Below are positions 1,131 through 47,915 of a stretch of DNA of 64,000 bases, in pieces. Below the pieces are notes generated by a model. The model searched no databases and was not told the origin of the DNA. It saw only the letters and a list, made by a program, of their open reading frames with translations. Source of the DNA: Podarcis erhardii (Eukaryota); assembly GCA_964252035.1 (NCBI GenBank), contig OZ176200.1; one strand, 5' to 3'. The translations under genes and the position numbers were made by a program. Each line of letters starts with the position of its first letter. Position 1 is the stretch's first letter.

Positions 1131-1131
<1 letters not shown>

Positions 1132-2444
1132 CCTAACTAAACCTAATGTGCTCTACACTGTGACATCAGAATGGTTATAAAAACACAATGTGTGTTGCTA
1201 CCTTTGCAGGTGCCAAGGTCTTTGCTGCTCTGATTCAACAGCATCAGCTTCTCTCTTGATATCATGGAAGTTTGGCCCACCTTGGCCCCTGCCACCGAGA
1301 ATAAGGAAACTGTACAAACTGGAAAACCTCACAAGCCTTCCGTGTTTGATAAGCTCCCTCACTTAAAGGCAGAGTGCCAGGTGCTTTCGAATGACACCTT
1401 GTGGGTGCAGATTGGCTGAGCAGCCTTGGAGCCTTTTTTTTTTTTTTTTTTTTTTTTTTGCTAAAAAGGACAGACATCTCTTAACTGCTGATACTTAGTG
1501 TAGGATATGCTGTACCCAGGCCAAAAAAAAAAAAAAAGCCCAGAAATCTAGTTCTGCATTGGCTTAGCTCATTCCAGTGAGCTGACAGGAAGCCAGATAG
1601 AGCTAACTGCCTTTCTTGTTGTCCTTTCTCAAGAGGACTCCAGCCAACTTGATCATTCACAACTGCCCCTTTAATAGGACCTGTGCAAGCCGAGGGGGAT
1701 TTCATCAGACTGCAGGCAAATGCTTTTGGTCTGCATCCAAGTTGCTTTGTACCCTAGCTTTTGTTGAGGGGAAAAAAGGCATATTCAGTGACAGCACTGT
1801 GTAATTTGTTTTGGTGGTAGCTCTCTGCATTCACCTAGCTGAATAGGCTCTGTACCTAGCTTTTTTCAATTAAATTACTCCCCTACTTTCTGCTGTTTCT
1901 TTTGTTTGTGGATTGTTCTTCCTCCCCCTCCCTCTCTAAGTACGCTTGCCAGTGGGGCTCGCATCAAAGACACATAAAACATACCGGTGGAGAATTCACA
2001 CATTCCCAGTCCTGTTATTGTTAGAGAGCCAAGGAATAACACACATACCAACCTTCTTTAAATGGTGCTTTCCTTCCTCCTGAGACATGCTCTCAACATA
2101 TTTATTTAGGAGGTAGAAGATGGAAGGAGGAGCATTAAGAAAGTTGTTGCATTCTCCTTTTCCCTGTACAAGAAATAGATGTTCCTCTGGCTTTTGCTGC
2201 AGTTATTAAAGCCAGCCCATGCAGAAAAGGTTGAGTATTCCTCATGTCCAAAGCCTGATATGTTCAGATCCAAGCAGTGGCCAGTGTTGAGGCAGGGAAT
2301 TCCACAGGAGCAGTGTAGCTTCCAAGAACACCCACCTTCCTTCTGTACATAAGTGAGTGAGAGAATATTAACCCGGTAGATAACATGGTTGTTCCCCGAC
2401 ACAAGGTCCACATCAGGTCGTTGAATTCAGTGGAATGATGAGCT

Positions 2445-2570
2445 CAGACCCGATTTTCCAGGGACAGTCCCAGATTTACAGAAGCTGTCCTGGTTTCTGA
2501 TTTGATCCCAGAATGTCCCGCTTTTCCTTAGGATGTCCCTATTTTCATCAGAGAAATATCGGAGGGTATT
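2445..2570. mobile_element. GGGAC-motif hAT-like MITE, degenerate
   Basis: Termini cagacc... / ...ggagggtat with repeated internal gggac/gtccc motifs. No clear TSD. Confidence 0.6.
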
Positions 2571-2865
2571 TATGCTCCAGGCCACCATACACAACTTCCA
2601 ACATGGGTTCAGCAATGGCATGCAAAAATGCAAGTTATGAAGCTGCCTCGTGCTGATTTTCCCATTCAGTGTTTAAAACCCTCTTGAGGTGTTCGGCTTG
2701 GACACGTGAGGGTAAAAGTAAATAGAGTGATGGAGGTACAATGTATTGTCGTTGCTGTCCCCCCCCCCCATGTGTCTCGGCATGCAGGGTATGTCCACTC
2801 CACCCCTGACTTTCACGCCTAACACAAATGTCTGAATGGAGTTTGTAAATGGGTTGGCTTGTCCC

Positions 2866-3070
2866 GAGAGCCCGTGTGGTATAGTGGTTAGAGTGATGGA
2901 CTAGGACCTGGGAGACCAGGATTCAAATCCTCACTTGGCCATGAAGCTCACTGGGGTGACGTTGGGCCAGTCACTGTCTCTCAGCTTAACCTACCACACA
3001 GGGTTGTTGTGGGGATTAAATGAGCAGTGGGAGAACTATGTATGGCACCTTGAGTTCTTTAGAGAAAACC
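2866..3070 (+). mobile_element. tRNA-derived CORE/MIR-like squamate SINE
   Basis: A-box tggtatagtgg, B-box ggattcaaatcc, core ggtgacgttgggccagtcac...ctaccacacagggttgttgtg. Confidence 0.8.
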
Positions 3071-4555
3071 TGGGGTACATGTGTTTTAAGAAATGAATTA
3101 AAGGCATATAAGCTTGCTTGTTTGAGGCAAACGTGAAGAGGCTTTTACATTCCTTCAGGGAAATACACTTTCAAGTCCACTTCAGATCTTCTTGCTAAAC
3201 ACATGGTCAGGGCAAAAGGCCTGGCAAAAGGTGGGGCCCACACATGTGCCCCCATCCCTCTACTGTAACTCTGTTATGACTAGCAGTAACTCTCCATGGC
3301 CTCAGGCAGAGGTCATTCCCAACTTTCTTGTGTGTATGCAGTCCTTTAATTGGAGACCAAACCTTGATGAGTCCTAGACCTTCTACAATGAAAGGATCTT
3401 CCCTACCACACTTCTAATGCTCTCCTCATGTTTCCTGAAGCATAGACCTCTACTTTCCCTCAGTCAGGAGCACTTCAAGATGCAAATCTACAACTTCTCA
3501 GCTGCACACCTAGACCTTAAACAGCTAGCAACATTCCCTGAGGTAAAAAAGCAAGTGAGGCAGGCAGCTTCATGAATGGGCGCCCCCCCCCCAGGAGAAA
3601 AAGAAAAGTGTGAAATGTGATTGGAATGGATCTTACTATATAAGATTTGCCTTTGCTATGTCAGTGGCTTTCCCTAAAATAAACCAAGAAGTGGAACTAT
3701 GGAGGAAAATGGGGGAAAGCAGATTCCAAGGCGATTGAGTAGTATGGCTGCCTCCCCTGCAGTAGACTTCTGAGGATATCACTTTGCTCAATTAAAGTTT
3801 TTCCCCCTGCATCTTCTTGGACGGAAGAGGCCTGTGCCAGCAAAAGCTGAAAGGGGGAGCCGTATGTGAAATATCTTCTCTAATTTTGGTGCCTTTTAAT
3901 AGCATGGATCAGTTCTGGCCCATCTTGCAAGCCACAGAATACCAAATTAGACCGTCACTCCCTTTGCTAAAATACTCCACTGGCTTAAGTCTTATCAAAA
4001 TGAATGAAGCTTGCCCTGGCAGCACACTGTGAGGAACTGTGCCAAAGTCATGTCTATATTAAGCAGAGCTGTAGTATATTGCTTGCTTTTCATTTGCCAA
4101 AGATAATTAAAATCAAAGATACCTCTAATAAATAATGCTAAACTTCAATAAAACTATTAGATGATGCCTCTCCCCATATGCAATATCTTAAGATAAATAG
4201 AAATTAATCTTTAAATACCCAGCTGGCAATGGGATTTAAAGGCTTGTGTCTGTCTGTGTGTGTGTGTATAAAATGGAAAAGAGAACATATCATACATTAT
4301 TCTTACAGAGATTGTTCTCAGTGTTATAGAAGAAGTAACACAAGATGTTTCATTAACATAACATAAAGCACTTTCAGGCTGATTAGCAGTAAAAGTATTT
4401 TCATTCAATTTTAGGTGTGCTCACAGAAGTATACTCTGAACAAGCAGCTAGGAAAGCACCCCCCCCCCCGCCAAAGACTTCCTGTCACAACTTCTCTTCT
4501 CCTTCTAGATCCTCCTTCTAGATCCCCCCCCCCATACAATTAAAGTACATTTGAA

Positions 4556-4819: not shown

Positions 4820-7800
4820 GAATAGTAGGTGGGCAAAAGTGCTCACATCCTGACTGCCATGTTTTGTTTCATTCCACACCCCAATACATTTTCCGCCAAG
4901 TGAAAGGAAGGGAGTAGCAAACCAAATACCTTTCGGCATACCAACATCTGCATTATTTTTTTTAACATGGTGAGAACCTAAAAGTCAAGAGCTTGGGCTG
5001 AAGTTTGAGAACTGGAAGCTGTGGGTATGGAGCAGCTCCACAATGAAGACTTCCACTCCACCTGCCACTATGAGGCCAACCATACAGGATCAGTACCGGC
5101 ACAGGAAAGGCAGTCCAAGCAGCCTCAGAGCTGTTTCCTAAGGCCAAGCTGGGCCCACACCTCAAAGCACTTTCTTTGTAACAAGCAAGGAGAAAAGTAT
5201 GGCTACTAATAGGAGCACCGTGGTTTTTTAAATCAAGATTAAGTGGTGGGGAGTGTGCATATCTTTCTACGCTATCTATCATTTTGCCTAATCGTTTGCA
5301 GTTATTTTTGTGAATGGAGGAGGAGGATTGTCAGAAGAAATGGTGGGTGGCTTCTATGTGTGTTGCAACTTTCAACACCTGTGTGCTGTTGGAAATGTAG
5401 GGTGTGTGTGTGTAGGCCTGAGAGATCCAATTCATTCATTTTTAGCAGAAAGAAAATTAAAATAAGCTTGCTGCATCATAACGGCTTTGGAATTTGTGTC
5501 AAGCATTTTGATGAGGTTTCCTGTTTCATGCTGCCAGCATTGTTGTCCACGTCTATCTCTGCTCTTCAGAGGGCCGAGCAGAGATGATCCAGCAGGCTGC
5601 TCCACCTATCTTTCCAGTGCAGCTTCCCAGCAACTATTAATGTTCCAACCTCAGCCACCATTTAAACAGGAAGAGCACTGGCAGCTTGTCACTTTGCAAA
5701 GCCAACGTCCGGTCTGGTCTATATTTTTGCATTCTAAAAGAAGACCACCTAAGGAAAGGCCATATATATATATATATATATATATCTTCTTCATGTCCAC
5801 AAAAAGACATTCGAGTGCACCTATCCCTCTCTTTGCAAATGCAAGGGCTAGTTTCTCATGCTACACACATTACCAGAGCTGTTAAGTTGGTCACAATGAA
5901 CTCAGAAATTTATTATTTTTTTGTAACTATCCCATTCTAGATTCAGGGAGTTCAGGACAGGATACATAGACCCCTAGTCTTTTTTTACTCATCACATCAA
6001 CTCTGAGAGGTAGGTTAGGCTGCAATATAGGCCCAAGGTGTGCCGGTCACCCAGGTGGGTGTTCATTGCACAAGCAATGTTCCTTACCCAACTTTGCTCC
6101 CTGACCGCACATTGTAGGCCACCCGGCCTTATGACTGAGTCTTATGAGGCTTCTAGAGATCAACTGACAACTCTACATGAGCCACCTGATATTTCTGTCA
6201 GTTGACAACCCACATGACTCCTCTTACAGCCGGGTTGAAAAAGTAGACCATTACATTCGGCTCTGAAGAGTTGCACATGTGAGCCTGTGCTCACCCAGCT
6301 GTGGGCCTATTTGTCCAGAGCATCAGGTGTCAACAGGCATGCAGTACTCCTGAGAACAACTGGATGTCAGCAAGCTTCATGTAACAGAAGGGAGCGCAGC
6401 AGAGTCGGTTTATTTCTCTTACCCCTCTGTGCTTCTTTAATTCCGACTCAAGTTTGCTTCCATTCCCATGTTCAGATGGTGTTATTTCATTCTGTCACTG
6501 TAAATTACTGTTGCTGAAAATGCTGAATCAGGAAATGGGTTATAGCTCTTGAAGAAATGAATCCCACATTATGTCAAAGTGCTTCTGCCTGCAGTTTATG
6601 CTGTGTCCCTCAGCGTGAGTCATTGTCACACATTTTGAAGGCCAGCGTTACACATCAGAGTCTTCAGGGTGTCAGCTTTTCTTGTTCCTGCAATCTTTGT
6701 GGGCAGATAATGTTGTTAGGTGACCTTTTTGCTTAATTCTGAGAGTGTGGGGTTGTGATTCCAGGGCTTATGATACAGCAGAACGGCTAGAGAGATAAAG
6801 CTGCTTGTTTAGCTGCAGCCCCCTAATGAGTTCAGTCGGACTGCCGAGGTCGGCAAGAGTGGGCAAGAACAGGATGTCATTTTTTTGATTTCCAAAACCT
6901 CTTGAAGGAAAGATGATTATTAAAGTTGGGAATCAGATGTAGAGCATGAAGTGGGTCCAGGAATTCAAACAAACAAAAACAAACAAATGAACAAATGAAT
7001 GAATGTTACACTTAACAGTTTTGCTGGGGAAACCCCAGCTCTTTCTGGGGTACCGAATAGGATACCCCGAAGAGCTTTGCCTCTGCAACCACATTTACTC
7101 ATTTAACTAAGGGCACTTCCAGAATGACCCACTTTTGTGCAGATCTTCCACACATTTGGGTAGATGCTGGTATAGATACCCTTTGTACACTAAGAGTACA
7201 CCTTCATAACCCACCGCAAAGAGAGCCTTAATAGCAACCGTTAAATCTTGCACAGCGAATCCACTTTGGACATTTTGCAGAAGGGAAATGGATGGGAAAA
7301 CTAGAGTGGGAAGTGCAGGATAACAGCCACTTAACAGCGAAGTTCTATAGCCCCCACACAAGTTTTGTGAAAACAAATTAGGATGATTGTTCCATATATG
7401 CTTTGTCTGGAAACATTGTATATCTTGGATTTAGCACAAGTGCTGATAATGCATTGCCCTGCTTTGTTGTTTTCAGCTTCTGGGTATGCTTTGTATAATC
7501 AGGTTCTTTCAGAGAATAAGAGTCTTGGAGGTTAATTTATGATGCCTTTATAAACATATTTGATAACTTTAGCAACGTAACAAATAACTTCAGTTTGTTT
7601 CTTTTGCAGCATCATTCGACATGTGGAAGGTTTTTGTGAATCTCTCTTATGGGAAAGCTTTGTGAATAAAAGGTGTGTGGCTGCTCTGCTATATCTAGCT
7701 TGGCCTTTAAATGTACCAGAATAAATAAAGAAATCACAAGGTAAGAAACGACATCAGAAATAAGGTTCCCTCCCTTGTATTCACCTTAAAAGAAAAGCAG

Positions 7801-9286
7801 AACTCGGGCCTTTGCAGACAATGAACAGGGAACTGTTATTTGATTGGTTAACTATAAAGACAGCAAACACACACACACCATAGAACATCCCACAGTGCTT
7901 ATAATGTCTCTCCATCCCTTATTCCCTCCCTTTAGTAGCATACTTCAGTGTCAATGTATAATAATAACACATGCAATGAGTTTGCGCTTGCCAGCCAGCT
8001 AGACTTTGTAGACATTCTCCCACACTGAGAGAAAGAAAAATAATTCACTGGCACCGATTTCATCTTCCACAAGTATGGAGAGTAGGAATCTCTCTCTCCT
8101 TTGCTTCCACTCCACCCACTCTCACGACTCTGTCCCTCTCAGATCTTCTTTGTTTCATGCTGGGAACACAAAGGAGCAGATTGTTTTGGCTAGGATGAGA
8201 TGGACACAGATGTGACCACCTGTTGCATGCTCCTTCCTTTCCATTGTGTCCTGAAGCACTTCTGAAGAAAAAAAATCACTGGGGGAGGAAAATGGTGACC
8301 TTTGGCATTGTTCAGTACCAAGCACGCTCTGCCATGGTTCGTTCCTTGATGTCCAGGTTGGCATCTTGGCGCCCGCTGTGCTGCTCCACTCAGAGGGTGC
8401 CCAAGCAGAGATGTGCCAACACAGGATCTGGTTTTGCCACAGCTTCTTCTCTGATTTCAAAGAGAGGAAATATCCTCGGACAAATCTGCTTTGTCAAGGT
8501 TGAAAATGTTCCGCACCACAGATGGCGACCATAAGGTGCAAGCGAGTTTTCCGATGAACTGGAGATGCCCTGCCCATTTGCTTCACTTCTGAAGTCTTAA
8601 AGGGGGTGGGGGGTGGCAGAGAAACACCCACCTTTTTTTCATTTATGGAGTGAGAAAATTTGCTCAAAACAGTTCCTCACTTTAACTCCTCTGCCCTGTA
8701 CTATTCGTGGCATCCCTGCTACTGCCAATTTGACAAGAGTGTAGCTCCTATTGCAAATCACCCCTCTTGTAGCACATTTGTAGCAATCCATTCCTTGGAA
8801 AGGAATGGAAAATTGTGAAGGTGGTGGGAGTGTGTGTGTGTGTGTGTGTGTGTGTAATTTTGCTCCGGTTCAAACTTCTGTTGCAAGAGGCTCTCTTGGT
8901 TATTCTAAGTGATGACTCACAAGAATGGTTGCAAAATGAGTTGCACACCGTGCCAGCCTTCTGCATCTGAATGCAGAAGTGCCCACCTAGCTTTTAACAT
9001 AACCGATGCTTTTAGGTCAAATGCTGCTTTGCTTACAGGATATTGATTGTAGGGGAATTTCCCAGCAAACAGCACGAGGGGACTTTTCAATCCCTCGGCT
9101 ATATGTACTGGGTAGGCCAGCGGCGGCAGCAATAGTTGCAAAAAGCAAAAGGCAAAGCATCTTATGACTTTCCACTTCCTCTGAGGCAGTACCTTTGTGC
9201 AAGTATTGGCACAGCCGTGCTGTCCCGGATGTGCCTTGTGAAGAGAAGGTGGCTACTGAGGTGTTGTACAGCCTGACAGTGAAAAG

Positions 9287-9785
9287 CAGTGGCATAGCGT
9301 GGGGGGTGCAGGGGGTGCCAGCTGCACCGGGCGCAACATTTGGGGGGGGCGCGCGCTCGCAGCTCTCTGCCCTTACCTGGCTCACTCACTCTCTCTCACA
9401 GTGCTGGCTGTGCGAATCCGATCCGAGCTGCCGGGTCGCCGCCCACTGTGGAGGGGGAGGGTGCCAGGCGTGCGTTGTGTTGCGGAGCGGAGAGAGAGCG
9501 AGGGAGGGACTATCTGGGGGAGGGACAGTGCAGCGGCCGCCCAGCACAGCGCTGAGCGCGGGAGAGAACCACACCCGACCAGCCCAGGGAGCAGCAAGAA
9601 GAAGCTGGCAGTGGCAGCAGGTTAGGGGTTAGGGGCGTAAATTACTTGCCTTGCCCCGGGTTAGGGGGCACAAATTACTTGCCTTGCCCTGGGTTAGGGG
9701 GCGCAAATTACTTGCCTTGCCCCGGGTTAGGGGGCGCAAATTACTTGCCTTGCCCCGGGTGCTGACAACCCACGCTACGCCGCTG
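9287..9785 (+). mobile_element. Non-autonomous hAT element, copy A (499 bp) with ~250-bp GC-rich internal insert
   Basis: TIRs cagtggcatagcgtggg / cccacgctacgccgctg. Perfect 8-bp TSD gtgaaaag (9279-9286, 9786-9793). Four ~33-bp subterminal repeats. Confidence 0.92.
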
Positions 9786-10009
9786 GTGAAAAGTGCAGGT
9801 TTCATGGCCATTTGGCTACATTTTGTCCAAAGATTAGAAAGCTAGCTACACTCACGTATGCTAGAGGTGACTGAAAAACAAGGGGAGTGGGTGTAGCTGA
9901 ATGACAGGGAGAGCAGATGAAGCTGGCATTTGGCATACAGAGTGGCAAAGAATCCCCCCCCCCCCACAAAAAAGCAATATTTAGAATCAAAAAGGAAACT
10001 GCCAGTATC

Positions 10010-10640
10010 GTAATGCCTTTCATGCAAGTTTATCGTGTGACCACAATTGAAATATTGGAAGCAGTTCTAGTCTCTGCACACCTCAAAAGAGATACCACAG
10101 GGCTGGCAAAGGTGCATAAAGGACAAGCAAAATGATCTGGAGGCTGGTGTATCTTCCACTCTATGGGGGAAAGTTATAATACTTAGAACTTTTTAATTTA
10201 GGAAAAGAGGGTGGGGAGTAAGGAGAGACTTGCTAAATCATGCAAGTGCATAGAAAGAAGTTATTGCACCATTTTCTTAATTTTAGAACTCGGGGGCCAT
10301 TGGACAAAGCTGAAGGGTGAGAGATTTGGGAAACGAAGTACTTCCTCACATGGTTAAGCTGTGGAATTCCCTGCCACAAGGTGTAGTGATGGCCACCAAT
10401 CTGGATGGCTTTGAAAGAGGAATTAGACAAGCTACTGATGCCCTGATGACTACGTTCAGCCTCCTGTATCAGATGTCTTATGCCTCTGAAAGCCGGTTTC
10501 TGATGAACAACAGCAGGAGAGGGTTACTGTGGTTGTGTCCTGCTTGCAGGCTTCTGAGGGACACCTGGTTGACCACTGTGGAAAGCAAGATGCTGGACTA
10601 AACAGGCTTCTGGTTGGATCCAGCCACTTCTTTTTATGCG
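10010..10640 (+). mobile_element. CR1 LINE 3' fragment, degenerate
   Basis: Residual RT C-terminal peptide (KLWNSLPQGVVMATNLDGFERG) and a squamate CR1-type 3'UTR ending ...ggatccagccacttctttttatg. Confidence 0.85.
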
Positions 10641-11659
10641 CTTGTGTTCTTTTAAAAGGGTTTGGCAGGAGAGCTCTTTTTTGTTTGTTTGCAATTCAAG
10701 GGTGCTGCTTGCTGCTAGGAATCTGGAATTGTCAGCCGACGCTTCTGTGCCTCTGTGGTGCCTGCCCAACTTGCACGGTGGCGAAGAAACAGATGATTAC
10801 ATAGGCACCTTAAGTCCCCAGGGCTCTCTTCTCCAACTGAGAGCCAAGCTGCTCCGAATTTCCCACCGCTTGGTGAAGGGGAAGTGGGAAATAATATTAA
10901 GAGTGCACCTCTGATTGAAAGACCCTCTTGCTCTGGGTTTCCCTTTTGCGATTTCCTTCATTTCATTGTGGGGAACATAGCTTCTGATTTGCAGCGTTGT
11001 CAGATTTATAGGACTTCACTTCCTGCCTAAACAGGGGCATAAAATAAAATGAAGGAGTATAAACCGACCAAGTATCCCAAGTGTTCTTTCTGTTATTCCA
11101 AAAATAGTAGGTTTTGTAGGAATGTCTTGAGAGAGAGAGATATAAAATGATATGTATGTTCAAATGTGCATCCTGGGATCTTTCTAAGCATTAATAACAT
11201 AAGCATTACCCACTTGGAAATAAATCTATGCCATCACAAAATTAACATGTAGGTGAAAGGTGAAAGAGGGATTTAGATCGAGAGATGAAGGCAGCAAGAC
11301 TTTTAACAGCATTGACCCTGCCATGGCAATGGTGTGTGTGTGCGCACGCTGATGTAATTCTGGGCTTCCTCTTTAGGCAGCCAAATGACTTGGACCACAT
11401 TGACTGCATGAGCTGGTTAATTGAGGGTGAGAAACGGTGGCTTCACAGGCTCTTGGTCCTGCAAGCCTTTGCAAGTCCTGATCAACAGCCTTCGCAAAGG
11501 CACCACCAACCAGCTGATCAGCAGTGATCAAAACCCCTGCTTTGGGCAGGCCCCATATCTATATGGCATGCAGGGCAAATGGGCATGGCTAGGCTAGGCT
11601 AATGATGCCTGTGGGCCAGAGGCCCACCACCAAAAAGCAAAACAGTGAGGACATCCAGG

Positions 11660-11870
11660 GATAAGAAGCCTGCTGATATGAACATTAGGACAAAACTTTT
11701 AATGATGAGAGCAGTTTGACAATGAGGCTCATTTCCTTGCTGTGTCTCTAAGCAGAAGCAGGATAGCCATTGCTTGGGGATGCTTTAGCTGAAGGTTTCC
11801 TGCATCAATCAGAGGTTTGGTCTTGATGGTCTGCAAGGCCCTGTCTAACCCTGTGATTTTATGCCTATAT
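11660..11870 (+). mobile_element. CR1 LINE 3' end (different subfamily)
   Basis: Tail ggtcttgatggtctgcaaggccctgtctaaccctgtgattttatg. Confidence 0.65.
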
Positions 11871-12756
11871 GACCTAAGCCTGGGACCATGGATATGGGAG
11901 GAAAGAATGGAAGTGTTTCACCCAGGATTGCCACAAGGTATGCTGAGATGTATACACTGACGGGAAGTGGGAGTGGAGCATCCTGCTTGCCCTGCCACTG
12001 TCTTTATTCAAGGTGGAAAGTGCAAAGAGTTATGCATACTTGGTTGAAAGGAGGACTCAAGTGTTCTGTATGTCAGCATCCAAACTGCCTTGCAATCAGC
12101 CTGTGTTGCCCATCTATAATGTCTGTAGAAGAAGGAGATGGATGGCCTGCAGGGCTGTCCCAAAACATACCTCAGTGGCTCCAGAATTTTGGAGATCCCC
12201 TTAGCCTGGAAAACACTGAGCATGCAAACAAGGAATTCTCCCCTGAGGCCTCTGACCTTCTTGGGGCATTGTGGGCTCTTACTCAACCTTGGGGTCCCAG
12301 AAAATGCTTGCCCTTTATTTCCCCCAGCCCGCACTCACTGAACTGTCACTCATTATTTCTAATAATAATAATAATAATAGGTGGTGTTCAGCTGTCCTTT
12401 TCTTGGAGTAGACCCTTGATATGAAGGGACCTAACTCAGCCATGCCATTCATTTCAATTGGTCTTCTCTGAGTAAAGCTGAGTTCAATACCACCCAATAA
12501 TTGGAGACTGTTAATTCAATTCTGTAGTTTAAATAGTAACGTGTATTAATGAAACTATGAGATTATAGATGGCACAAGATTAGCGTTGTAGTTTTTAAGC
12601 CTGCTGCTCTAAGATAAAAAAAGAGAGAGGTTCCAAACTTCAACTTCCTTATCTACACTACACACTTGTTTTGGTTTTTAAAAGGGAATCCTAGGAATTA
12701 TAGTTTGATGAGGTACTGAGAATTCTGTTAGAGATCCTCACCCCGCCCTGCCCCAT

Positions 12757-12759
<3 letters not shown>

Positions 12760-12790
<31 letters not shown>
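12760..12790. repeat. (AG)n microsatellite
   Basis: Direct reading. Confidence 0.95.
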
Positions 12791-12796
<6 letters not shown>

Positions 12797-35712: not shown

Positions 35713-38461
35713 TTATACAATATCCTGCGTTCCTATACTATGTTAGTTACTATATTTAGTTTCATCCGTAACCAGGTAAGCACCCTGAGTTACAATAAGC
35801 AGCCTCATTGGCTCACACTCAACTTTTTATCCCATGGAGTCTTACGTGAGTAGTGCAAAACACATATGTCCAGAGCTGGCACCCAACAGAGTATGTTTAG
35901 GATGCCACTTGGAGTCTGAAAAATCATCTGATGACACGGGGCTGCCACAAAAACATATTCTCTCAATATCTCCTATAACATCTGTGGTGTCTTAATGTTG
36001 TTTGTTTTCTGCTGTCTCTGCACATCCCTGGCTGATGGGCTTGGGGAAGTGCGCAACATCGTGATGTCACAACATGGGGATAAATAATGATTACAAGGAG
36101 ACATGGTGTCTTCATTGTGACAGATGCATTTTTACCTGCTGCCCTGTATCACTAAAAATATAGTTTCAGTCTCAATTGGCATGGGCACCCAAAGCATAAC
36201 AGAAAAGGCAGAAGCTGGCAAAATTGTGACTGCATAAGCAATCTGAACCCTTTTACAGGCTATCATGTGCTCAGTCTCTCCCTATGCTGAGGGAGGGTAT
36301 GAACTAATAGTGTGTCGTACTGATGGCTGCTCCTGAAATGATGCTATGAAATGCTATATCTATGCAATGGAAGAGAACAGATGGCCAAATGGCCACTTAT
36401 ACCATTACCAAGTCAGGGAACATGACAACAACCAGAGTCAGCTCCACATAGTTCTTTGTGATTTCATCCCTGTGGAAAGCACTGGTGTGATCAGAATATG
36501 ATGTAACCACTTTCCACAGGACCACAGATGCCAGCGTGTTTTGATGGAACTCCTGCTCACATTACTTAATTTGTTCAAGTCATATCCAAATATGTGCCAG
36601 CTTTCAGTTCCAGGAGGTCATAGTTGTCCTGCATGACCAAACCCATCACCCCAAAATTAAGGCTGCAATCCTATACATACTTACCTGGGAGTAAGTCTCA
36701 TTGAACTCAATGGGACTTAATTCCTCAGCAGGCATGCACAAGATCGCACCACATAAGCACTCTTGGACATAACTGTGAGGGGCACAGGAAGTGCGAGTGC
36801 CGCATTCTTCCGTTTCATAATTCCCTCACCTTCACTTCTCAGAGATACACAAGCAAATTCAAGGATTCATGTTTTCTGAGGACAATGAGAGTGGAGGATA
36901 TGGACATTCTGTTTTGAATGATACAGAGATGCAAGAAAACAGCACTTGTATTTCCTATCGTCCCCATATCTATAGCTGCTCTAAAATGTAGGACATATCA
37001 TTTAATAAACAAAAAACATGCTATGGATGTGTGCACTCTGGCCTACAGCTTATCATGTGCAATCTGGCTAACAACATGGACAAGGTTGTACACAGAATTT
37101 GAAAGGAAGGCTTCGGTAACAAGAAAGCAAGCAACTTTTGCTTTATAAATATTCTGAGGTTAAGTACTTCGACGTATAAAGATTTTGAGGTTAAAACAGC
37201 AGTATCTGAAGCTGCTCTAACATCTATTCAACTTTTAGGATAATTCTGCAAAGTAACTGGAAGTTACAGAATGTCATAGTGTGTCGCAAACCTAAAATAA
37301 ATGTGCAAACACAGCTTCTCGAACAGGCTCCCTCCTCCAATAGCCCTTCACGCTATAAGCCACTTGGGAACAAGAGCAATATGAAACTAGTATGTGTGTC
37401 TAGTGCTCAAGAAAAAGAAAAGCAAGATTATGGTAGTTTTTAGTCTTTGCAGAATTTGTAGCTTGCAGTGCACTTCTGTGCATGTTTTATTGGAAATAAG
37501 CCTTGCTGAGTTCAATAGGACTTACTTCTTGGTCAGTATGCTTAAAATTCCAAAGTGCATTGTGTTCATAATAATAGGAGGTTGTAAAACAAAAACAAGA
37601 CCCAAAAATAACACACACACAGTCACAAACCACTAGGTACAAGCAACAATGACAGAGCTTTTCTTTCAAGATACCAGACTATAAGTGTTAGAAAGGCTTC
37701 AAAATGAAGTTTATATTTAGGCACAAAATATTATTATGCAATCCACTGAAATGTATGTCTCCCCTCAAAAGGCCTTGAGCTATATTTTTATATTTAATTT
37801 TGTAATTTGAAATAGGGAATATTAATAACACTTTTTATCAATGCTGTATCTATGTTAAAACAGCCTTCAGCATTAAGCAGTAATGAATGTGGATCAGTAA
37901 ATTATTAAATTTCTTGATATTTATTTTGTCTTGATCCAAAGAGAGTGCAAACTTGCATGATAACGTACATTTCCATTTGCTATCAGACAGTTCAGTTTCT
38001 TAGACTAGGTTTTTACTAATTAATATTAGAGAAGATTAAATAGGCTTAAATACGTTTACAAAGAGGGCAGATGTACTGTAAATTGGAATAGTGGAACAGC
38101 TGTTATGGAGGTACCGTGCTATTTATGCTCCTATTGTGCAGAGAGGGATTACTGCCTGTAACATTAAACCATACCTGATTTTCACATTTGAAAATATAAA
38201 ACATTTACTAGTTGGTAAAATTACTAATGGAACCTAATAGGTCATATGGGAATGTCCACAGATGTTTTAAAAAATCAACTATAATCAGTTAATCGCTGTC
38301 TGACAAACTGTAGATGTATTATATATACACAATTCCTACACACTACGCATGTTTCCTGTGGATAAAATACTTTGCTATATTTAAGTGGACAGATGTCAAT
38401 TTTTATTTTTTTATTTTTTTGCAGTTGGGAGAGTTCCTAAAAGTTTGAACTCACCTACATT

Positions 38462-38662
38462 GGGCCATAGCTCAAAGCACATGCCTTTAATGCAGAAGCT
38501 TCCAAGTTCAATCCCCGGCAACTCCAGTTTTTTAAAATAAGGATCTGGTAGCAGATGATGGGCAAAACCTCTGCCTAAAACCCTGGAAAGCCACCAACAT
38601 TTAGAGTAAACCTTAATGGGCTCGGTGGGCTGATGGTTTGACTTAGTATAAGGCAGCTTCAT
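38462..38662 (+). mobile_element. Same SINE family
   Basis: gggccatagctc...agttcaatccccggcaactccag...cctctgcctaaaaccctgg...gtataaggcagcttc. Confidence 0.75.
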
Positions 38663-39417
38663 AGATCCACATCAGCCCAAAAGTGGACTGAGAGAACCTT
38701 TTTATGAAGATAAAAACCAACAGACACTATATTTTTAGAGTCTTCTCAACAATAGTCCAAGGGATGCGGTGGGATGGGGGGAAGAATAGACCGGTGAGGA
38801 AAATGGAACAGGTGAGATGAAAACAAGTCTGGCTTGGGGATCTTCATAATCCTTTTTATAGCTTTGTAAAGATTAGTTGGAACATATTATAAACAGCTTA
38901 TGGCTGCATTATCATTTCCATGTGATTTCTGAGAATCTCTTAGGGTTACAGTGGCAAGGAAACTACCTAAACCACACTGTGCCAGTGCCAAAGAAGCCAC
39001 AGGCTGGGGGACTCTCCCAGTGCTTCATGTATCTCATCGGTACTTATACTAGGATGGTCATGAATATGAACTGTATCAACAGCCTTTTCTTTAAGAGTAC
39101 TAACCTTAACCTTTCTCAGGGTAAAGCAGAAGCATTTTCCCCCTGCATGAGGACTGTAGCTGATCCCTTGAAACTCATTTTATATTCTTATGGGCAGGTA
39201 ATGTAACAGTAATGGGCAGGAAATGTTCAACTGCAGTTGAACATTCCAAGTTTGTCCACCTTGGCCATGTTTACATAGTTTCATTTCCTCGCGTCTCCTT
39301 TTAAAAATACAAATGGAATGTTTGAGCTGATTTACCCTTAGGATGTTTTAAGTCATGAAAGAGTACATAGGAATGATGTATACAACTGTAACCTTCTGAA
39401 ATAAGCAAGATATTTAC

Positions 39418-41390
39418 CTGAAAACCTTGCTTCCGCTGGTACTTTCGCCTTTGCTGCATGTCAGCAAACGTAGCTGCTCCAGTTGGATAAGTATAGGCCA
39501 TATGTGGTAGGAAGCTCATTTGATCTATTCCTGGGTATGGTCGTAGCCCAGGAATACTGGTCTGAACTGGTGGCATAAAAGTGGCTGGGGGAAATGCGCT
39601 CTGTGGCGGAAGTGTGGTGTACAAAGGTTTGGCACTAAAAGGGCTCATACCAAATAATGGATTAGTGCTTTTATCCAAACTATTTGAATTAGAAAATTCT
39701 TTCTTGATAAAAGTCAAGTTCAGTGGCTCATCTGAGGTTTCAGATGACGAAGAAACACTGTTGTGGTCTACGTTTACACTATTGGATTTTGTTTTGTTCT
39801 TTGTGGCTATAATACTTTTGGGTTCCTTCATTTGTTTTGGTAATGACAAGTCCAAAGGCTCAGCCTGAAGCTCCTCAGAGGAGAAACTGTTTGGAGTGTA
39901 AGAACTACTATGGGAGTTTTTAGAAGATGTAGAAGAAAGATTTAATGGAGAAGGAGTATTGCTCCTGGAGTGGTCCAATTTATCAACTGGTTTAATATTG
40001 GTAAAGTGAGTAGGTTTTGTTAGCCTGAGAGGGGTATCACAGTTAGTAACGCTATTATGAAGTTCAGCTATAGATGGTGATGTTATAGAGTCCACAGGCT
40101 TTATAGGGGATCTGGCTGACAAAGAGTCTTTAGTGGGAGTGTTGTTGGTGGCAGCCAGCACCACCTTGGCACTGTTCCTTTCCAGCGATGGTGACCTGGA
40201 AGTTGAGTACTGGTAGACTTTTCTTTGTTCGAACCATTCCTTCACAAATTCCTGAGGAAGGCCAACGGCAATGGAAATTTTCAGTAGTTCATCAGAGGTG
40301 GGTTCCATATTCATAGCAAAATATGCTTTAAGTACAGACATATGGTCCTTGTATGGATTGATGGGGCTAGTCATTCCTTTCTCAGAAAGTACTGATGACA
40401 GGAGGAGAGCTTGCTTATCGACAAACACTCCTGGTTTGCTAGGAGCCATGTTTTCATGAGGTTGGAGGACTGCCTTGATTTCTTCGTTCATCTTACACAG
40501 GTAACGTTCATGCTGATGAAGGGGAATGGGACCAGGAAAGCTTTCTTTACAGAACTGGCATGAAAATGGAGTAGGTATATTATGGTTGTCTATCATTTTG
40601 TCTTCAGTTACCAGATCTATTAGGGTGCGTAGCTTTTCTTTCTTAATGTTATTGAGCTGCCTCCTCGAGTCTGTAGTTAAACTCTGGAGACAAGCTTTGG
40701 CTTCATTGACCTTTTCTAATGTGTAGTCAATAATACTTTTAGTGGCACCATTATGACTGACTACTGGAAGACCCACAGGTGGAATACCAGGAGAAGTAAC
40801 GCCTTGTTCCTCAGGTTGAGAACATGGGTCCTTCATATGGTAACCTTTCAGCTTGGAGATTTCTTCAGCACTGCAGTCCATTTTCTGCCTGGAAACAGTG
40901 TTGTCCACAATCTGTAGGACTTTCTGCACCTCACTTAAATTACTGCCTATTGCTGGGAATCCAAGTAAAGATGCATCCATCCCTACCCCTAAGTGCTGCA
41001 TTGGACTTTGCGTGGAAGTATGAACTCCTATTGGGCTGGTTGCACCAAGTCTGCCATTCATGAAAGGATTAGCACCAGTGAACCCATGGGTTGCCATCAG
41101 AACTTTATATTCATTGAAATCTAGTGGTTCCGTTTTGATTTTCAGTAAGCCTGATTGCTCAGACATACTAGGTGGTTTTCCATTCTCCAGCTTGTTTCTC
41201 AGTTGTGTAATGGCTGAATTAGTAGGTGAAGAAGATACAGAATTAGGAGAAGAACCCGTCTTGATATTGTTTCTCATTCGACCATTTACAGAGATTAAGC
41301 CAATGCATTTCTTGCTGCTGATGTGTGAACTATACGAGCCAGAATGGGAGAAACGCTTCTTGCAGTTTGGACACTCATAGGGCTTTTCAC
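39418..41390 (-). CDS. ZEB2: ZEB2 exon 8 (1973 nt): last N-terminal finger, SMAD-binding domain, homeodomain-like domain, CtBP-interaction motifs
   Basis: Acceptor ttgcag| at 41391 and donor |gtaaat at 39417; open throughout. Contains [10 protein letters not shown]-type SMAD-binding segment ([15 protein letters not shown]), [10 protein letters not shown]...WFEQRK, PLRLT/PLNLS/PLDLS/PLNLT, and IKTE and IKKE SUMO consensus sites. Confidence 0.99.
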
Positions 41391-41759
41391 CTGCAATTAA
41401 TTTTTAAAAATTATTTTTTAATAACTCACAAATAGACCAGTTCTCTGCACATTTCACTCCTTTCATCTTGCTGCATTTTCTCCTTCCTTCCAAGTTATGT
41501 TTAGGTTTTTGTGACTGGAAACAATTCAAACTAGACAATCTACAATTAGCTGCATGCAAGATTCCTTCTCATCCTGTGATACTCCCTAGTTTTTACTGAT
41601 GGCTCACATTTTGTTGAAAGCTATAGATGTCTTTACAAGGGAAACAGAGAGTGCACTGTACTGTACTATGTAAAGGAATACAGCTGAAAACTTACATGTA
41701 ATGCACAGTGTTTGCAATATCTAAATTCGGATAGCAGAAGGATTTTGCCATGGCTTTTA

Positions 41760-42125
41760 ATAAGGACCAGGCAACATGCAGTTACAACAGTAGCATAATT
41801 TTGTGTGAATCGGTTGGCATAGTAAAATGGGGGACAAATATGACCCAGTTCACATTTGAATGCAAATTTAATGCAAATATACACTATTCAAAACAATATG
41901 TTGAACAGAAACACCGTGACTCATTAAAATTTGCACTTCTCCAAATTTTTCAATGCAGTTCTCCAGCAAAGCAATGTGCACAAAAATGCATATGGAAAGT
42001 GTGCATAAAAAGGCATATATTGGTGGAAATAACAAATACATTGTTTATGGAGGAATTACTGTAAAAAATGTGTATCCTGAGAAAAATTCACACTAAAATG
42101 GTGGTGAATTTTCATGAGAACTTTT
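41760..42125. repeat. Unclassified AT-rich interspersed repeat
   Basis: Internally repetitive aatgtgcacaaaaatgcatat / gtgtgcataaaaaggcatatat motifs, resembling a lizard repeat I recall but cannot name. Confidence 0.4.
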
Positions 42126-42269
42126 TTTTAGAAATTAAGCTTTAGAATAAATTATGGAAGTTCACTCATACTTGCTTATTAGCTTTTAATGGTTTACTTC
42201 TAGATGATCTACATGGATAATGGCCAGAGAACAGGAGACATGTATTTCTGAAAAGGGCATTGAAGCACT

Positions 42270-42380
42270 CTGGTCTTGCTTCAGGCTCCCCATAAGTATC
42301 TGATTGGTTTCTGTGAGAACAGGATCCTGGACTAGGTGGGCAATTGGTTAGATCCAGCAGGGCTGTTCTTATGTTTTTTA
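42270..42380 (+). mobile_element. CR1 3' tail
   Basis: gatcctggactaggtgggcaattggttagatccagcagggctgttcttatg. Confidence 0.7.
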
Positions 42381-44322
42381 TTCCTCCTCTACTCTCATTT
42401 CCAGCCTAAAGCTGGAACCACTTTCTGAATCTGTGTACATATATTTTTAGGTTTTACCCTAAGGCGGGGCAGATAATTTTAACACAGGTTTTGGCAGCTG
42501 TGAATGAATTTTGGGCTCATGTGCTCCCATCCCCCCTGCTTCTGCTCTCTTGACTCCTGTAAGGCTCTGTTTCCTTCCATTTGTCCATAGCACAGTTAGC
42601 CATGATTGTCCAAATCAGGCAGGTTATGGTTTGTGCAAATCATACTTTGCCTCCAAAGCAGAATGGGAAACCATGGTTTGAACTGAGTTTCTGATTTAGG
42701 TTTGGCAAGCTTTTCCTATTTAGGTGACATGACAAAATATTGTTTACAACTGAACCAGGGAACAGGAAAAATTCAAAAATGAAGGTTAGGAGGAGGGAGT
42801 ATGAGAACCCATTGCTGTCTCTTTGCCTTTTCTTGCTACTTTGGAATGAGTCTACTTGAGTTCAGTAGCCACTAGTCTTTGAAGGATGGGAACTCTCCCC
42901 TCTCCTGTGATGGATAACCCTTGAGTCATGATCTGGATTGGCTACACAAAATATAAAGGCAGTTTTTCCACTCTCTGTCTCATGCTTGAATCACCCCCCC
43001 CCAATTCCTGGGCTTGTATTAATTTAATTAACTTCTCAAATGGAACAAGACATCCCCCACTCGTTCTTCCACATGCGCCCCCTGCCACCCCCAAATTTGC
43101 TCCAGGGGGGCCGGGGGAACTCACAGAACAGATTTAGTGGGTGAATGTGAAAGGGGAGGAGAGAAGAGGTGATGTACATAAGCCCAAAGTTCACTGCAGC
43201 TAGTTATTATAGTGGGAAACTGTGGTTTGCTATTACAGCTGAGTTGAGCATTAAACATATTAAACTTCAGTTGGAGCATTAAACATAAGCTTAAATCCCT
43301 TCAGCTCAAATCAGTGGAGTTTAGAAGTGCTTAACTTTGAGATTGTACCCAAGGTTTGCAAATGCTGATCTACTAAACAAAAAACAAAGTTCACTGCGAG
43401 ATTTTACATGCCTGCAGATTAGATAGCTTAAACATTAGTATTATTATATATAAGCAGAATATACTTTTTAAAAAAAACTTATGAAGAGTGTATAATTACA
43501 GAAACTTATTCAGACTATTTCTTAGCTTTAAAATACTGCTTTTTTAGTCTTCGGTATATTTGTCTTTGTTTCTGATTTGCCTTTGAATTTATTTGAATAA
43601 ATCAAAGTCTTTGAATACTTGACCAGTGTTAATAGCTTTACTCACAATGTCTGCATCAAAGGGTGAAGACTTTTAGTTGGAGGAGAACTCTAAATATTAT
43701 TATTCAAACATTGACAAGTTCCAAATATAAGGCAAAGTGTTGCCCTATTTTTTCGCTGTCATGTGTAACTGAATGACTTAATGCACTCAGCAGAGGCTAT
43801 TTATTTCAACGAAGGGGATTGAATTAGGAACACAAAATTATATTTTTAATTGATGTGATAGCCGATGCAGGCCAGAAAGGCAGGGTATAAATATTGTAAA
43901 TGGATATATAAAGTGGCTAGTGTGTTCAGCTTGGATGTGGACAACACAACTTCGAAGTCAGACAGGCCACTTCACACATTACATGGCAACAATCTCATGT
44001 TGGCTATTAAGTGCATCTTTATTGGGAAGCTGCAGCCAATCTGAAATCTCTGGCAAAGATACCTGAATGTTTGTTGCTTGTTGTGACATCCAGCTGTGAT
44101 GGTATAGATGTCCACTCACACAACTGGGGAGGCGGGGAGTTAGAGGAAGAGGAAGTCTTGTTGCACAAACTTAATTCTGCTCACCTGACACTGGATTTTG
44201 CAGAATGTTTTACAGGTACTTAAAAGTACAGTGTATGAAGAAGCTATGAAGCTCATCAAGTGTGATGCCGTGTCACTATCTCTCAGCTCAACTTATCATG
44301 CAGGGTGCTTGGGAGGCTAAAT

Positions 44323-44574
44323 CAGAGGTCAGCAAACTTTTTCAGCAGGGAGCCAGTCCACTGTCCCTCAGACCTTGTGGGGGCCGGACTATTTTTTTTT
44401 GGGGGGGGGGATGAATGAATTCCTATGCCCCACAAATAACCCAGAGACACATTTTAAATGAAAGGACACATTCTACTCAAGTAAAGACACACTGATTCCC
44501 AGACCATCCGTGGGCCACATTTAGAAGGCGATTGGGCCATATCCGGCCCCCAGGCCTTAGTTTGCCTACCCATG
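44323..44574. mobile_element. hAT (Charlie/Buster-type) MITE, 252 bp
   Basis: Imperfect TIRs cagaggtcagcaaact / agtttgcctacccatg. 8-bp TSD ggctaaat / ggctaaac with central TA. Confidence 0.85.
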
Positions 44575-44720
44575 GGCTAAACAGTTGCTGTGAACTCTTT
44601 GGAGGAAGGATGAGATGCAAGTGTGATAAAATAATATGAATGAGGCAGCCATTCCAAGTAAGCAAGCTTAATTTGTTTATTGCTGCTGGATTGTGGGTGT
44701 TGGTCTTGTTCATCTTTAAG

Positions 44721-44885
44721 CAGTGGCATAGCGTGGGGGGTGCAGGGGGGCCGGCCGCACCGGGCGCAACATCTGGGGGGGCGCGCTCGCACTCGCAGCT
44801 CTCTGCCCCCTGCTAAAATCCACAGGTTAAGGGGCGCAAATTACTTGCCTTGCCCCGGGTGCTGACAACCCACACGACGCCACTG
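44721..44885 (+). mobile_element. Same hAT family, copy D (165 bp, empty backbone) in ZEB2 intron 7
   Basis: TIRs cagtggcatagcgtggg / cccacacgacgccactg. Perfect TSD tctttaag (44713-44720, 44886-44893). Confidence 0.92.

Positions 44886-45258: not shown

Positions 45259-45495
<237 letters not shown>

Positions 45496-47815: not shown

Positions 47816-47915
<100 letters not shown>

What the first reader, a model, noticed from the sequence alone, without database searches (positions are those of the whole stretch)
9287..44885. A cargo-carrying hAT mini-transposon family: one ~165-bp backbone, empty or loaded with different CpG-rich inserts
Seen: four copies (9287-9785, 13087-13255, 13386-14087, 44721-44885) share TIRs (CAGTGGCGTAGCGTGGG-type), subterminal sequence and distinct 8-bp TSDs, so each is an independent transposition. 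B and D are 169 and 165 bp. A and C have the same ends plus unrelated GC/CpG-rich inserts (~250 and ~470 bp), both placed within about 25 bp of the same internal hinge next to a TTAGGG motif. Established: 8-bp TSDs indicate hAT; Pack-MULEs in plants and Pack-TIRs in animals capture GC-rich 5' gene fragments by gap repair. Inference: this is an active or recent Pack-hAT family that shuffles host promoter/first-exon DNA in a lizard and seeds ectopic CpG islands near a dosage-sensitive developmental gene. I do not know whether this family has been described.
Basis: partly seen in the sequence, partly recalled or inferred. Interest (0 to 1): 0.8.

Follow-up and report, generated by a model that had tools for sequence, protein, structure and literature searches.

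The report
Young mosaic hAT mini-transposon family in lizard
Four small cut-and-paste (hAT-type) transposons around the lizard ZEB2 gene are real, recent and independent insertions, one still absent from another genome of the same species, but their two "cargo" inserts are repeated hundreds to thousands of times, and I could not test whether they were stolen from host genes.

Summary
Four copies share a 17-bp terminal inverted repeat and subterminal arms, and each has its own 8-bp target-site duplication: 8 TIR hits in 4 proper pairs against 0.03 expected by chance. No copy touches an assembly gap.

Contigs from public runs show precise empty sites. C is missing from a contig of the best-matching organism and from a second species. 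B is missing from the second species. A is missing from a third species. The family was therefore active very recently, and C may still be segregating.

The two inserts are unrelated to each other, but neither is unique. Summed contig depth is roughly 3,000 times single-copy depth for A's interior in two species. For C's interior it is about 850 times in one species and about 40 times in the other. A and C are therefore members of amplified subfamilies that jumped here whole. They are not local captures.

Whether the interiors came from host promoters (true Pack-hAT) or from longer transposons could not be tested. No lizard genome, Dfam or Repbase was reachable. No autonomous partner lies in the window.

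The backbone is as GC- and CpG-rich as the inserts. Copy A already shows CpG decay.

The scan has noted cargo-bearing hAT elements before on other DNA of this genome (GNAL, CENPW cargos).

The parts
9287..9785 (+). Copy A (499 bp). Left arm 9287-9372, interior about 9373-9620, right arm 9621-9785 holding 4.1 units of the 33-bp repeat (9626-9760). TSD GTGAAAAG at 9279-9286 and 9786-9793.
   Evidence: Present in run X1, where a single-copy contig runs 26 nt into the element. Site empty in an RNA-run contig of organism H (record 8).
9373..9620 (+). A-type interior. 248 bp, GC 67%, CpG o/e 0.64, no ATG-led ORF. Ends ...GCAGCAG next to GGTTAGGGG.
   Evidence: for composition and translations; summed contig depth 359,000-519,000 against about 114 single-copy in X1, and 425,000-492,000 against about 140 in X4; unrelated to the C interior; no protein relatives of its 108-aa ORF.
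13087..13255 (-). Copy B (169 bp). Short subfamily with a 22-bp repeat variant (13131-13192) and a perfect 17-bp TIR. TSD CCTGTGCG / CCTGTATG (6 of 8).
   Evidence: the highest depth, about 2.1 million in X1 and 1.8 million in X4. Present in X1 (records 5 and 6). Precise empty site in X4 record 26, which joins 13085 to 13263 and skips 177 = 169 + 8.
13386..14087 (-). Copy C (702 bp). Right arm 13386-13504 with 2.6 units of the 33-bp repeat, interior about 13505-13975, left arm 13976-14087. TSD CACCAACA at 13378-13385 and 14088-14095.
   Evidence: joint 13377 to 14088 skips 710 = 702 + 8, with 8 letters fitting both sides. Seen in a 2,120-nt X1 contig at single-copy depth (107) and in an X4 contig.
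13505..13975 (-). C-type interior. 471 bp, GC 66%, CpG o/e 0.66, no ATG-led ORF. Contains a short hairpin (13652-13712) and a (CTTGC)n run (13619-13640).
   Evidence: depth 95,000-99,000 in X1 but 5,300-6,100 in X4. RNA contigs holding it also hold backbone (X19 record 21, X18 record 14).
44721..44885 (+). Copy D (165 bp). Short form with one 33-bp unit. Shares the segment CTGCTAAAATCCACAGGTTAAGG with C's left arm. TSD TCTTTAAG. Lies in a ZEB2 intron.
   Evidence: Presence or absence in other genomes was not tested, because D lay outside the stretch given to read laying.

Best explanation
These are four independent, recent insertions of one mosaic family of non-autonomous hAT transposons. The family has a 17-bp TIR (CAGTGGCGTAGCGTGGG), imperfectly inverted subterminal arms, a 33-bp repeat array of variable length in one arm, and 8-bp TSDs.

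A hAT transposase encoded elsewhere in the genome moves them in trans (inferred).

The family is split into subfamilies that keep the ends but differ in the middle:
- a very abundant short form (B-like);
- a form with the A interior, at roughly 3,000 copy-equivalents in two species;
- a form with the C interior, which expanded about 20-fold in the window's species relative to a sister species, and whose copy here is still missing from another genome of that species.

A and C arrived here as complete units. Nothing was captured at these loci.

The most likely source of the different middles is double-strand-gap repair after excision, with template switching. That process both deletes and replaces internal DNA between the arms, and the hinge at GGTTAGGG with short homologies fits it. 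This step is inferred, not shown.

Where the A and C interiors first came from is open. My odds are about 0.4 for GC-rich host 5' gene DNA, 0.35 for a longer or autonomous hAT element, and the rest for other repeats.
For: - Four proper TIR pairs against 0.03 hits expected by chance, each with its own 8-bp TSD.
- Shared arms with mosaic relatedness. The A and C right arms are 96% identical and share the CAGCGG TIR variant. The A and D left arms are 90% identical, and the A and C left arms 83%.
- Precise empty sites, each equal to the element plus 8 bp, for C in X1 and X4 and for B in X4. The A site is empty in organism H.
- Depth against a single-copy flank of about 114 (X1) and about 140 (X4). 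A interior: 359,000 and 425,000. C interior: 95,000-99,000 and 5,300-6,100. B: 2.1 million and 1.8 million.
- The A interior's depth is of the same order as, and below, that of its own arms, as expected if it sits inside the arms.
- The arms are abundant in RNA-run contigs of two further species (depth 800-4,460). The A interior is nearly absent there (0-5), so the interior is younger or narrower in distribution than the arms.
- The interiors have no ATG-led ORF and no Pfam or Rfam signal.
Against: - The depth is a sum over Logan contigs at 88% likeness or better, which the tool itself warns is not a copy number. Part of the interior depth could come from copies outside hAT arms, for example if an interior is a piece of another repeat.
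- Joints suggesting deletion derivatives of A have short sides (20-28 nt) and are individually unreliable.
- No autonomous partner was seen.
- The empty C allele in X1 could reflect heterozygosity in the assembled individual rather than a second individual. Either way the allele exists.
- The gap-repair origin of the middles is inferred from anatomy alone.
Confidence: 0.75

Rival explanations
1. True Pack-hAT. Each interior is a piece of a host gene's promoter, 5'UTR or first exon. It was copied between the arms once by gap repair and then amplified by transposition to hundreds or thousands of copies.
For: - The interiors are unrelated to each other and to the arms. They are GC-rich, have no ATG-led ORF, and carry donor-like ends: A ends ...CAGCAG next to GT, and C holds GAGAG|GTAATT in the same orientation.
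- One X1 contig leaves A's interior at 9587 into other GC-rich DNA.
- One RNA contig of organism I (record 17) matches 9493-9611 but has unaligned letters at both ends. It does not run on into the right arm.
- Unchecked earlier notes of this scan report hAT elements with GNAL and CENPW 5' cargo in the same genome.
- hAT is the commonest Pack-TIR superfamily in animals, and a frog hAT-N8_XT carries a CAPSL 5'UTR (PMC8277862).
Against: - No parent locus was seen or could be searched.
- Composition does not discriminate, because the backbone is equally GC- and CpG-rich.
- The other RNA contigs holding C's interior also hold backbone, so they are element copies and not a parent transcript.
- In the one survey I read, multicopy Pack-TIRs in animals number 4 of 370, and the example it describes was amplified onto three chromosomes. 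Thousands of copies would be far outside that range.
- I could not confirm that the GNAL and CENPW elements share this backbone; the look-up by sequence was blank.
Confidence: 0.4
2. Plain deletion-derivative series. A and C keep internal non-coding parts of longer, possibly autonomous, hAT elements. B and D are their internally deleted descendants. No host DNA is involved.
For: - Shared arm length shrinks stepwise: about 90 bp shared by A, C and D against about 63 bp in B.
- D equals C minus its interior, with an 11-nt overlap (GGTTAGGG-GC) at the junction.
- Many contig joints link points inside A's interior (9385-9501) to the right-arm repeats (9657-9729).
- The maize Ac/Ds family shows the same spectrum of heterogeneous non-autonomous elements sharing only TIRs and subterminal repeats (PMC3260210 abstract).
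Against: - The A and C interiors share nothing with each other, so they cannot be overlapping pieces of one parent unless that parent is long.
- No transposase fragment lies in either interior.
- The arms are abundant in two further species where the A interior is almost absent. This suggests the interior was added to older arms.
- The joints have short sides and are weak evidence.
Confidence: 0.35
3. The interiors are fragments of other high-copy repeats, for example a CpG-rich retroelement 5' region, that became nested or templated between hAT arms. Their high depth then reflects that other repeat.
For: Depth alone cannot tell in what context the interior copies lie. The earlier scan notes include a chimeric hAT-mariner element in this genome (unchecked).
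Against: - Interior depth tracks and stays below the depth of its own arms in both species.
- No heavy loose ends at the interior borders appear among the best-supported ones, whereas they do appear at the element termini.
- Nothing else in the 64-kb window, which holds other repeats, matches the interiors.
Confidence: 0.1

Closest known systems
Multicopy Pack-TIRs of animals, e.g. Pack-hAT-N8_XT of Xenopus tropicalis carrying 291 bp of the CAPSL 5'UTR (Tan et al. 2021, PMC8277862)
   Same: Short non-autonomous hAT ends and distinct TSDs at each copy. A GC-rich non-coding insert of a few hundred bp between the arms. The unit is moved as a whole.
   Different: The frog case has an identified parent locus and was amplified onto three chromosomes. 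Here no parent is known, and the depth suggests hundreds to thousands of copies. The survey counted only 4 multicopy cases among 370. In the searched text it does not mention lizard, Anolis or reptile.
Heterogeneous non-autonomous Ac/Ds elements of maize (Ds-del, Ds1, Ds2; PMC3260210)
   Same: One hAT family whose members share only the TIRs and subterminal repeats and vary greatly in size and internal composition. They are mobilised in trans and make 8-bp TSDs.
   Different: It is a plant family with a known autonomous partner (Ac). Here the partner is unseen. The variable part is GC/CpG-rich, and one arm has a 33-bp tandem array.
Pack-MULEs of rice and other plants
   Same: The proposed logic is the same: TIR elements that pick up GC-rich 5' gene fragments and amplify them.
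   Different: They belong to a different superfamily (Mutator, 9-11-bp TSDs), with parents documented genome-wide. Membership is excluded here by the 8-bp TSDs and the hAT-type TIR.
hAT elements with GNAL-XL or CENPW 5' cargo noted earlier in this same genome by this scan (s1-259082, s1-263131, s1-232443, s1-232444)
   Same: Same genome, hAT ends, CpG-rich cargo of a few hundred bp, and reported high copy numbers.
   Different: Those cargos contain recognisable first codons of named genes. The A and C interiors have no coding part. I could not check whether the backbone is the same (one search was blank, which per the operators means nothing).

Membership tests
hAT superfamily, non-autonomous (MITE-like) element | 8-bp target-site duplication | tested here: met
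   Three perfect 8-bp TSDs and one at 6 of 8. Empty sites skip the element plus 8 bp: 710 = 702 + 8 and 177 = 169 + 8.
hAT superfamily, non-autonomous (MITE-like) element | Short terminal inverted repeats beginning (C/T)A(G/A) | tested here: met
   17-bp TIR CAGTGGCGTAGCGTGGG. It is perfect in B and 82-94% complementary in the other copies.
hAT superfamily, non-autonomous (MITE-like) element | Target preference nTnnnnAn (from my own knowledge of Ac, hobo and Hermes) | tested here: inconclusive
   Only GTGAAAAG fits fully. The other three TSDs fit at most one of the two positions. Four sites are too few to judge.
hAT superfamily, non-autonomous (MITE-like) element | An autonomous partner encoding a hAT transposase with matching TIRs | not testable with these tools
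   None lies in the window. The only long ORF is a ZEB2 exon. No lizard genome or repeat library could be searched.
hAT superfamily, non-autonomous (MITE-like) element | No coding capacity of its own | tested here: met
   No ATG-led ORF in any frame of A or C. No protein relatives of the 108-aa ORF over A's interior.
Pack-TIR / Pack-hAT (as defined in PMC8277862) | TIRs and TSDs flanking an internal segment that is not transposon sequence | tested here: inconclusive
   TIRs and TSDs are present. The interiors differ from the arms and from each other. Their non-TE nature is unproven, and both are high-copy.
Pack-TIR / Pack-hAT (as defined in PMC8277862) | An unambiguous parental copy of the captured segment elsewhere in the genome | not testable with these tools
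   No genome-wide search was possible. The only hints are one X1 contig leaving the A interior at 9587 and one RNA contig with unaligned ends.
Pack-TIR / Pack-hAT (as defined in PMC8277862) | Cargo derived from a gene (exon, UTR or promoter) | not tested
   No coding part is available to search. Composition and donor-like motifs are only suggestive.
CpG island (sequence criteria: 200 bp or more, GC 50% or more, o/e 0.6 or more) | Length, GC and CpG o/e thresholds | tested here: met
   A is 499 bp, GC 65%, o/e 0.63. C is 702 bp, GC 66%, o/e 0.69. Flanks have o/e 0.13-0.29.
CpG island (functional sense) | Unmethylated in the germline, so CpGs are preserved | tested here: inconclusive
   Three of the four listed private differences of copy A from the family majority are CpG-to-TpG/CpA changes, at 9478, 9546 and 9612. 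That hints at methylation, but the sample is very small.

The most novel reading that the evidence does not exclude
The A and C interiors are host promoter or 5'UTR fragments. Each was captured once by a currently active hAT family and then amplified to about 10^2-10^3 copies, and C burst in one wall-lizard lineage within the time since a sister species split. That would be by far the largest amplification of Pack-TIR cargo reported in an animal. It would also give a living vertebrate system in which DNA-transposon gene-fragment capture and spread can be watched as polymorphism.
Probability: 0.3. Interest if true: 0.75.

Novelty: new member of a known kind. Interest (0 to 1): 0.42.

Why it matters
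Cut-and-paste transposons that still move are uncommon in amniotes. An insertion that is present in the assembly but precisely absent from another genome of the same organism code points to very recent or ongoing hAT activity in a wall lizard. That makes the family useful as a marker system and as a source of structural variation next to genes such as ZEB2.

If the interiors prove to be host 5' gene DNA, the family would show that animal DNA transposons can spread promoter-like fragments in thousands of copies. The published survey found almost only single-copy cases.

If they prove to be ordinary internal transposon sequence, this is a routine young MITE family. It is worth a Dfam entry and no more.

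Tried and rejected
- Protein route to other copies or a parent. The 108-aa ORF over A's interior gave no homologue. The ZEB2 exon ORF is not on record for fetching orthologous loci.
- Exact 28-mer of the right arm against metagenome contigs: no hit.
- Rfam over the whole window at gathering scores: nothing. Rfam over 9200-14200 at a permissive E-value gave only a chance-level mir-4484 match (E 0.42, 24.7 bits against 90 needed) on a hairpin in C's interior.
- Similarity between the A and C interiors was rejected. The local alignment score lies within the shuffle distribution on both strands.
- The 12-nt inverted copy of the arm motif inside C's interior (13619-13630) sits in a (CTTGC)n microsatellite. 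I do not take it as evidence of a nested element.
- Earlier-findings look-ups by sequence for both interiors and for copy D were blank. A look-up for an autonomous hAT returned only L1-type notes.
- Literature: no paper in the library describes this family or Pack-TIRs in lizards. One lacertid genome paper reports hAT at 2.3% of the genome (PMC9498476).
- The look-up of sequencing runs was busy three times before it answered.
- I did not read, fill or look up any N stretch.


Full report
**Observation**

Reading the sequence confirms four elements at the stated coordinates.

| Copy | Coordinates | Length | TSD |
|---|---|---|---|
| A | 9287-9785 | 499 bp | GTGAAAAG on both sides |
| B | 13087-13255 | 169 bp | CCTGTGCG / CCTGTATG (6 of 8) |
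| C | 13386-14087 | 702 bp | CACCAACA on both sides |
| D | 44721-44885 | 165 bp | TCTTTAAG on both sides |

- The 17-bp terminus CAGTGGCGTAGCGTGGG, allowing up to 3 mismatches, occurs 8 times in the window. The hits form exactly four inward-facing pairs, against 0.03 expected from shuffles.
- A right-arm 19-mer occurs 9 times against 0.02 expected.
- blastn of the four copies against the window finds no fifth copy and no match for either interior.
- B and C are inverted relative to A and D.
- The assembly gaps (19693-20395 and four others) lie outside every copy and TSD. A, B and C sit in one ungapped block and D in another. Nothing here depends on continuity across a gap, and I did not try to recover those letters.

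**Anatomy**

In the A/D orientation the element has four parts.

- A left arm. About 90 bp of it is shared by A, C and D, and only about 63 bp by B.
- A hinge around ...CTAAAATCCACNGGTTAGGG.
- A right arm that begins with a 33-bp tandem unit, GGGTTAGGGGGCGCAAATTACTTGCCTTGCCCC. It is present 4.1 times in A, 2.6 times in C and once in D. B has a 22-bp variant repeated 2.8 times.
- The last 30 bp or so, ending in the TIR.

The arms are also imperfectly inverted beyond the TIR (32 nt, 75% complementary in B).

A replaces 16 nt of the backbone. C's junction is ambiguous over an 11-nt repeat of GGTTAGGG-GC.

Relatedness is mosaic.

- The right arms of A and C are 96% identical and share the TIR variant CAGCGG.
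- The left arms of A and D are 90% identical, C and D 88%, A and C 83%.
- B and D are only 79% identical overall.

The interiors (A about 9373-9620, C about 13505-13975) are 66-67% GC with CpG o/e 0.64-0.66. Neither has an ATG-led ORF. They align to each other no better than dinucleotide shuffles do. The short, cargo-free copies are just as GC- and CpG-rich (B 64%, o/e 0.55; D 67%, o/e 0.70). Composition therefore does not mark the interiors as foreign.

**Evidence from other genomes**

Public runs holding window 9200-14200 were found. Logan contigs of two DNA-type runs and two RNA runs were laid on that stretch at 88% likeness or better. The DNA-type runs were X1 (organism A, the best holder) and X4 (organism B). 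The RNA runs were X18 (organism H) and X19 (organism I).

Result 1: empty sites.

- A 2,120-nt X1 contig at single-copy depth (107) joins 13377 to 14088. It skips 710 = 702 + 8, and 8 letters fit both sides. An X4 contig does the same. C is therefore precisely absent from a genome (or an allele) of the best-matching organism and from a second species.
- The same X4 contig joins 13085 to 13263, skipping 177 = 169 + 8. B is therefore absent in organism B. X1 contigs run 22-26 nt into both ends of B, so B is present there.
- An X1 contig runs 26 nt into A, so A is present there. A contig of organism H joins 9286 to 9819 with 15 other letters between, so A is absent there.
- Whether A is present in X4 could not be read from the output. 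D was outside the stretch.
- These are pre-insertion alleles, not excisions. They confirm three independent and recent transpositions of different ages. C is the youngest and possibly still segregating.

Result 2: depth.

| Stretch | X1 depth | X4 depth | Ratio to single-copy flank |
|---|---|---|---|
| Single-copy flanks | about 70-116 | about 90-152 | 1 |
| A interior (9367-9533) | 358,852 | 424,703 | about 3,000 in both |
| C interior (13542-13875) | 95,000-99,000 | 5,300-6,100 | about 850 in X1, about 40 in X4 |
| B bins | 2.1 million | 1.8 million | above 10,000 |

- The tool warns that summed contig depth is not a copy number, so these are orders of magnitude only. Even so, neither interior is unique.
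- A and C belong to amplified subfamilies. The C type expanded roughly 20-fold in the window's lineage, which fits its polymorphic copy here.
- The A interior's depth is of the same order as, and below, that of its own arms. The best-supported loose ends sit at element termini and not at interior borders. Both points fit interiors that lie inside the arms.

Result 3: distribution.

- In the RNA runs of organisms H and I the arms are abundant (depth about 800-4,460). The A interior is nearly absent there (0-5), and the C interior is low (6-18).
- The arms are therefore older or more widespread than the A interior.

Result 4: possible deletion derivatives.

- Many low-depth joints link points inside A's interior (9385-9501) to the right-arm repeats (9657-9729).
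- They look like deletion derivatives. Their short sides (20-28 nt) make each one unreliable.

Result 5: CpG decay.

- Three of the four listed positions where copy A differs from nearly all family contigs are CpG-to-TpG/CpA changes in the window copy (9478, 9546, 9612; checked).

**Is this a Pack-hAT?**

The defining test is a parent locus outside the element, and I could not run it. Every tool that reaches beyond the window holds microbial, viral or protein data.

- The interiors have no coding part to search. A's 108-aa ORF found nothing.
- A metagenome scan for the right arm was empty.
- Rfam gave nothing.

Two weak hints of a non-element context for A's interior exist. One X1 contig leaves the interior at 9587 for other GC-rich sequence. 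One 151-nt RNA contig of organism I matches 9493-9611 but has unaligned letters at both ends. It does not run on into the right arm. The RNA contigs that hold C's interior also hold backbone, so they are element copies.

The scan's earlier notes report hAT elements with GNAL-XL and CENPW 5' cargo, some at high copy number, elsewhere in this genome. That raises the prior for capture. Those notes are unchecked AI notes, and I could not confirm that they concern the same backbone.

The published survey of animal Pack-TIRs found 370 cases, 208 of them hAT. Only 4 were multicopy; the example it describes was amplified onto three chromosomes. A text search of that paper finds no lizard, Anolis or reptile (PMC8277862). 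Heterogeneous non-autonomous hAT families that share only their ends are classical (maize Ds; PMC3260210 abstract).

**Most likely mechanism**

- Shown: these are non-autonomous hAT-type elements that insert with 8-bp TSDs. They inserted here at three or more different times, one very recently, and they belong to subfamilies with different, amplified interiors.
- Inferred: a hAT transposase encoded elsewhere mobilises them by recognising the TIR and the subterminal repeats.
- Inferred: the different middles arise during repair of the gap left by excision. Template switching deletes, duplicates (the 33-bp array) or replaces DNA between the arms. Each new middle arose once and then spread.
- Open: the first source of the A and C interiors. 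My odds are about 0.4 for host GC-rich 5' gene DNA, about 0.35 for a longer or autonomous hAT, and the rest for other repeats.

**Context**

- The window lies in ZEB2 on the minus strand. The 658-aa ORF at 39301-41277 matches the solved homeodomain of zinc finger homeobox protein 1b (E 5e-32; Pfam Homeodomain).
- Zinc-finger exons sit near 47837-47899, 45268-45330 and 35479-35541. The last coding exon is at about 21183-21750.
- D is intronic. A, B and C lie 7-12 kb beyond the stop codon.
- By sequence criteria A and C qualify as CpG islands. The CpG decay in A and the high copy number argue that they behave as methylated repeats. No functional effect on ZEB2 is shown.

**Verdict**

- The central claim of host capture remains open.
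- As it stands this is a new member of a known kind, a young mosaic hAT MITE family. It has a moderate chance of being an unusually prolific Pack-hAT.
- The scan has met the same theme before on other DNA of this genome.

Noticed in passing
window 39301-41277 (-), 21183-21750 (-), 35479-35541 (-), 45268-45330 (-), 47837-47899 (-): The window carries ZEB2 (zinc finger homeobox 1b) on the minus strand. It holds the large homeodomain exon, C2H2 zinc-finger exons and the last coding exon with the acidic tail. One zinc-finger exon sits between two assembly gaps.
   Followed up: partly
window 10369-10535, core 10386-10420: A short piece of another high-copy repeat (...CCTGCCACAAGGTGTAGTGATGGCCACCAATCTGGATGGCTTTGAAAGAGGAATTAGACAA...). 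Its summed contig depth is about 26,000-29,000. About 90-130 contigs diverge at 10385 and 10421 in both DNA runs, and it is also present in both RNA runs. The family was not identified.
   Followed up: no
window 12373-12539: A moderately repeated stretch, at depth about 2,000-2,700 against about 100 single-copy. It lies next to a (TAA)n run at 12360-12379. Not identified.
   Followed up: no
window 9626-9760, 13411-13495, 13131-13192: One arm of the element holds a tandem array whose unit number differs between copies: 33-bp unit x4.1, x2.6 and x1, plus a 22-bp variant x2.8. Each unit carries a telomere-like TTAGGG. Contigs that go from the 33-bp units back into the 22-bp units (joints 13479/13480 to 13131, depth 650-1,860) show hybrid arrays elsewhere in the genome.
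   Followed up: partly
window 13079-13086 and 13256-13263: B's two TSD copies differ at two adjacent positions (GC against AT). The empty site in organism B appears to read like the left copy (CCTGTGCG), so the right copy appears to have mutated after insertion. One of the two changes is a CpG transition.
   Followed up: partly
window 10292-11885: Low-depth RNA-run contigs (depth 2-4) of two other species cover unique sequence downstream of ZEB2. This could be read-through, unannotated transcription or DNA carry-over. It was not resolved.
   Followed up: no
window 13652-13712: A 22-nt imperfect hairpin inside C's interior (77% complementary). It gives a chance-level Rfam match to mir-4484 (E 0.42, far below the gathering score). 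I regard it as noise.
   Followed up: yes
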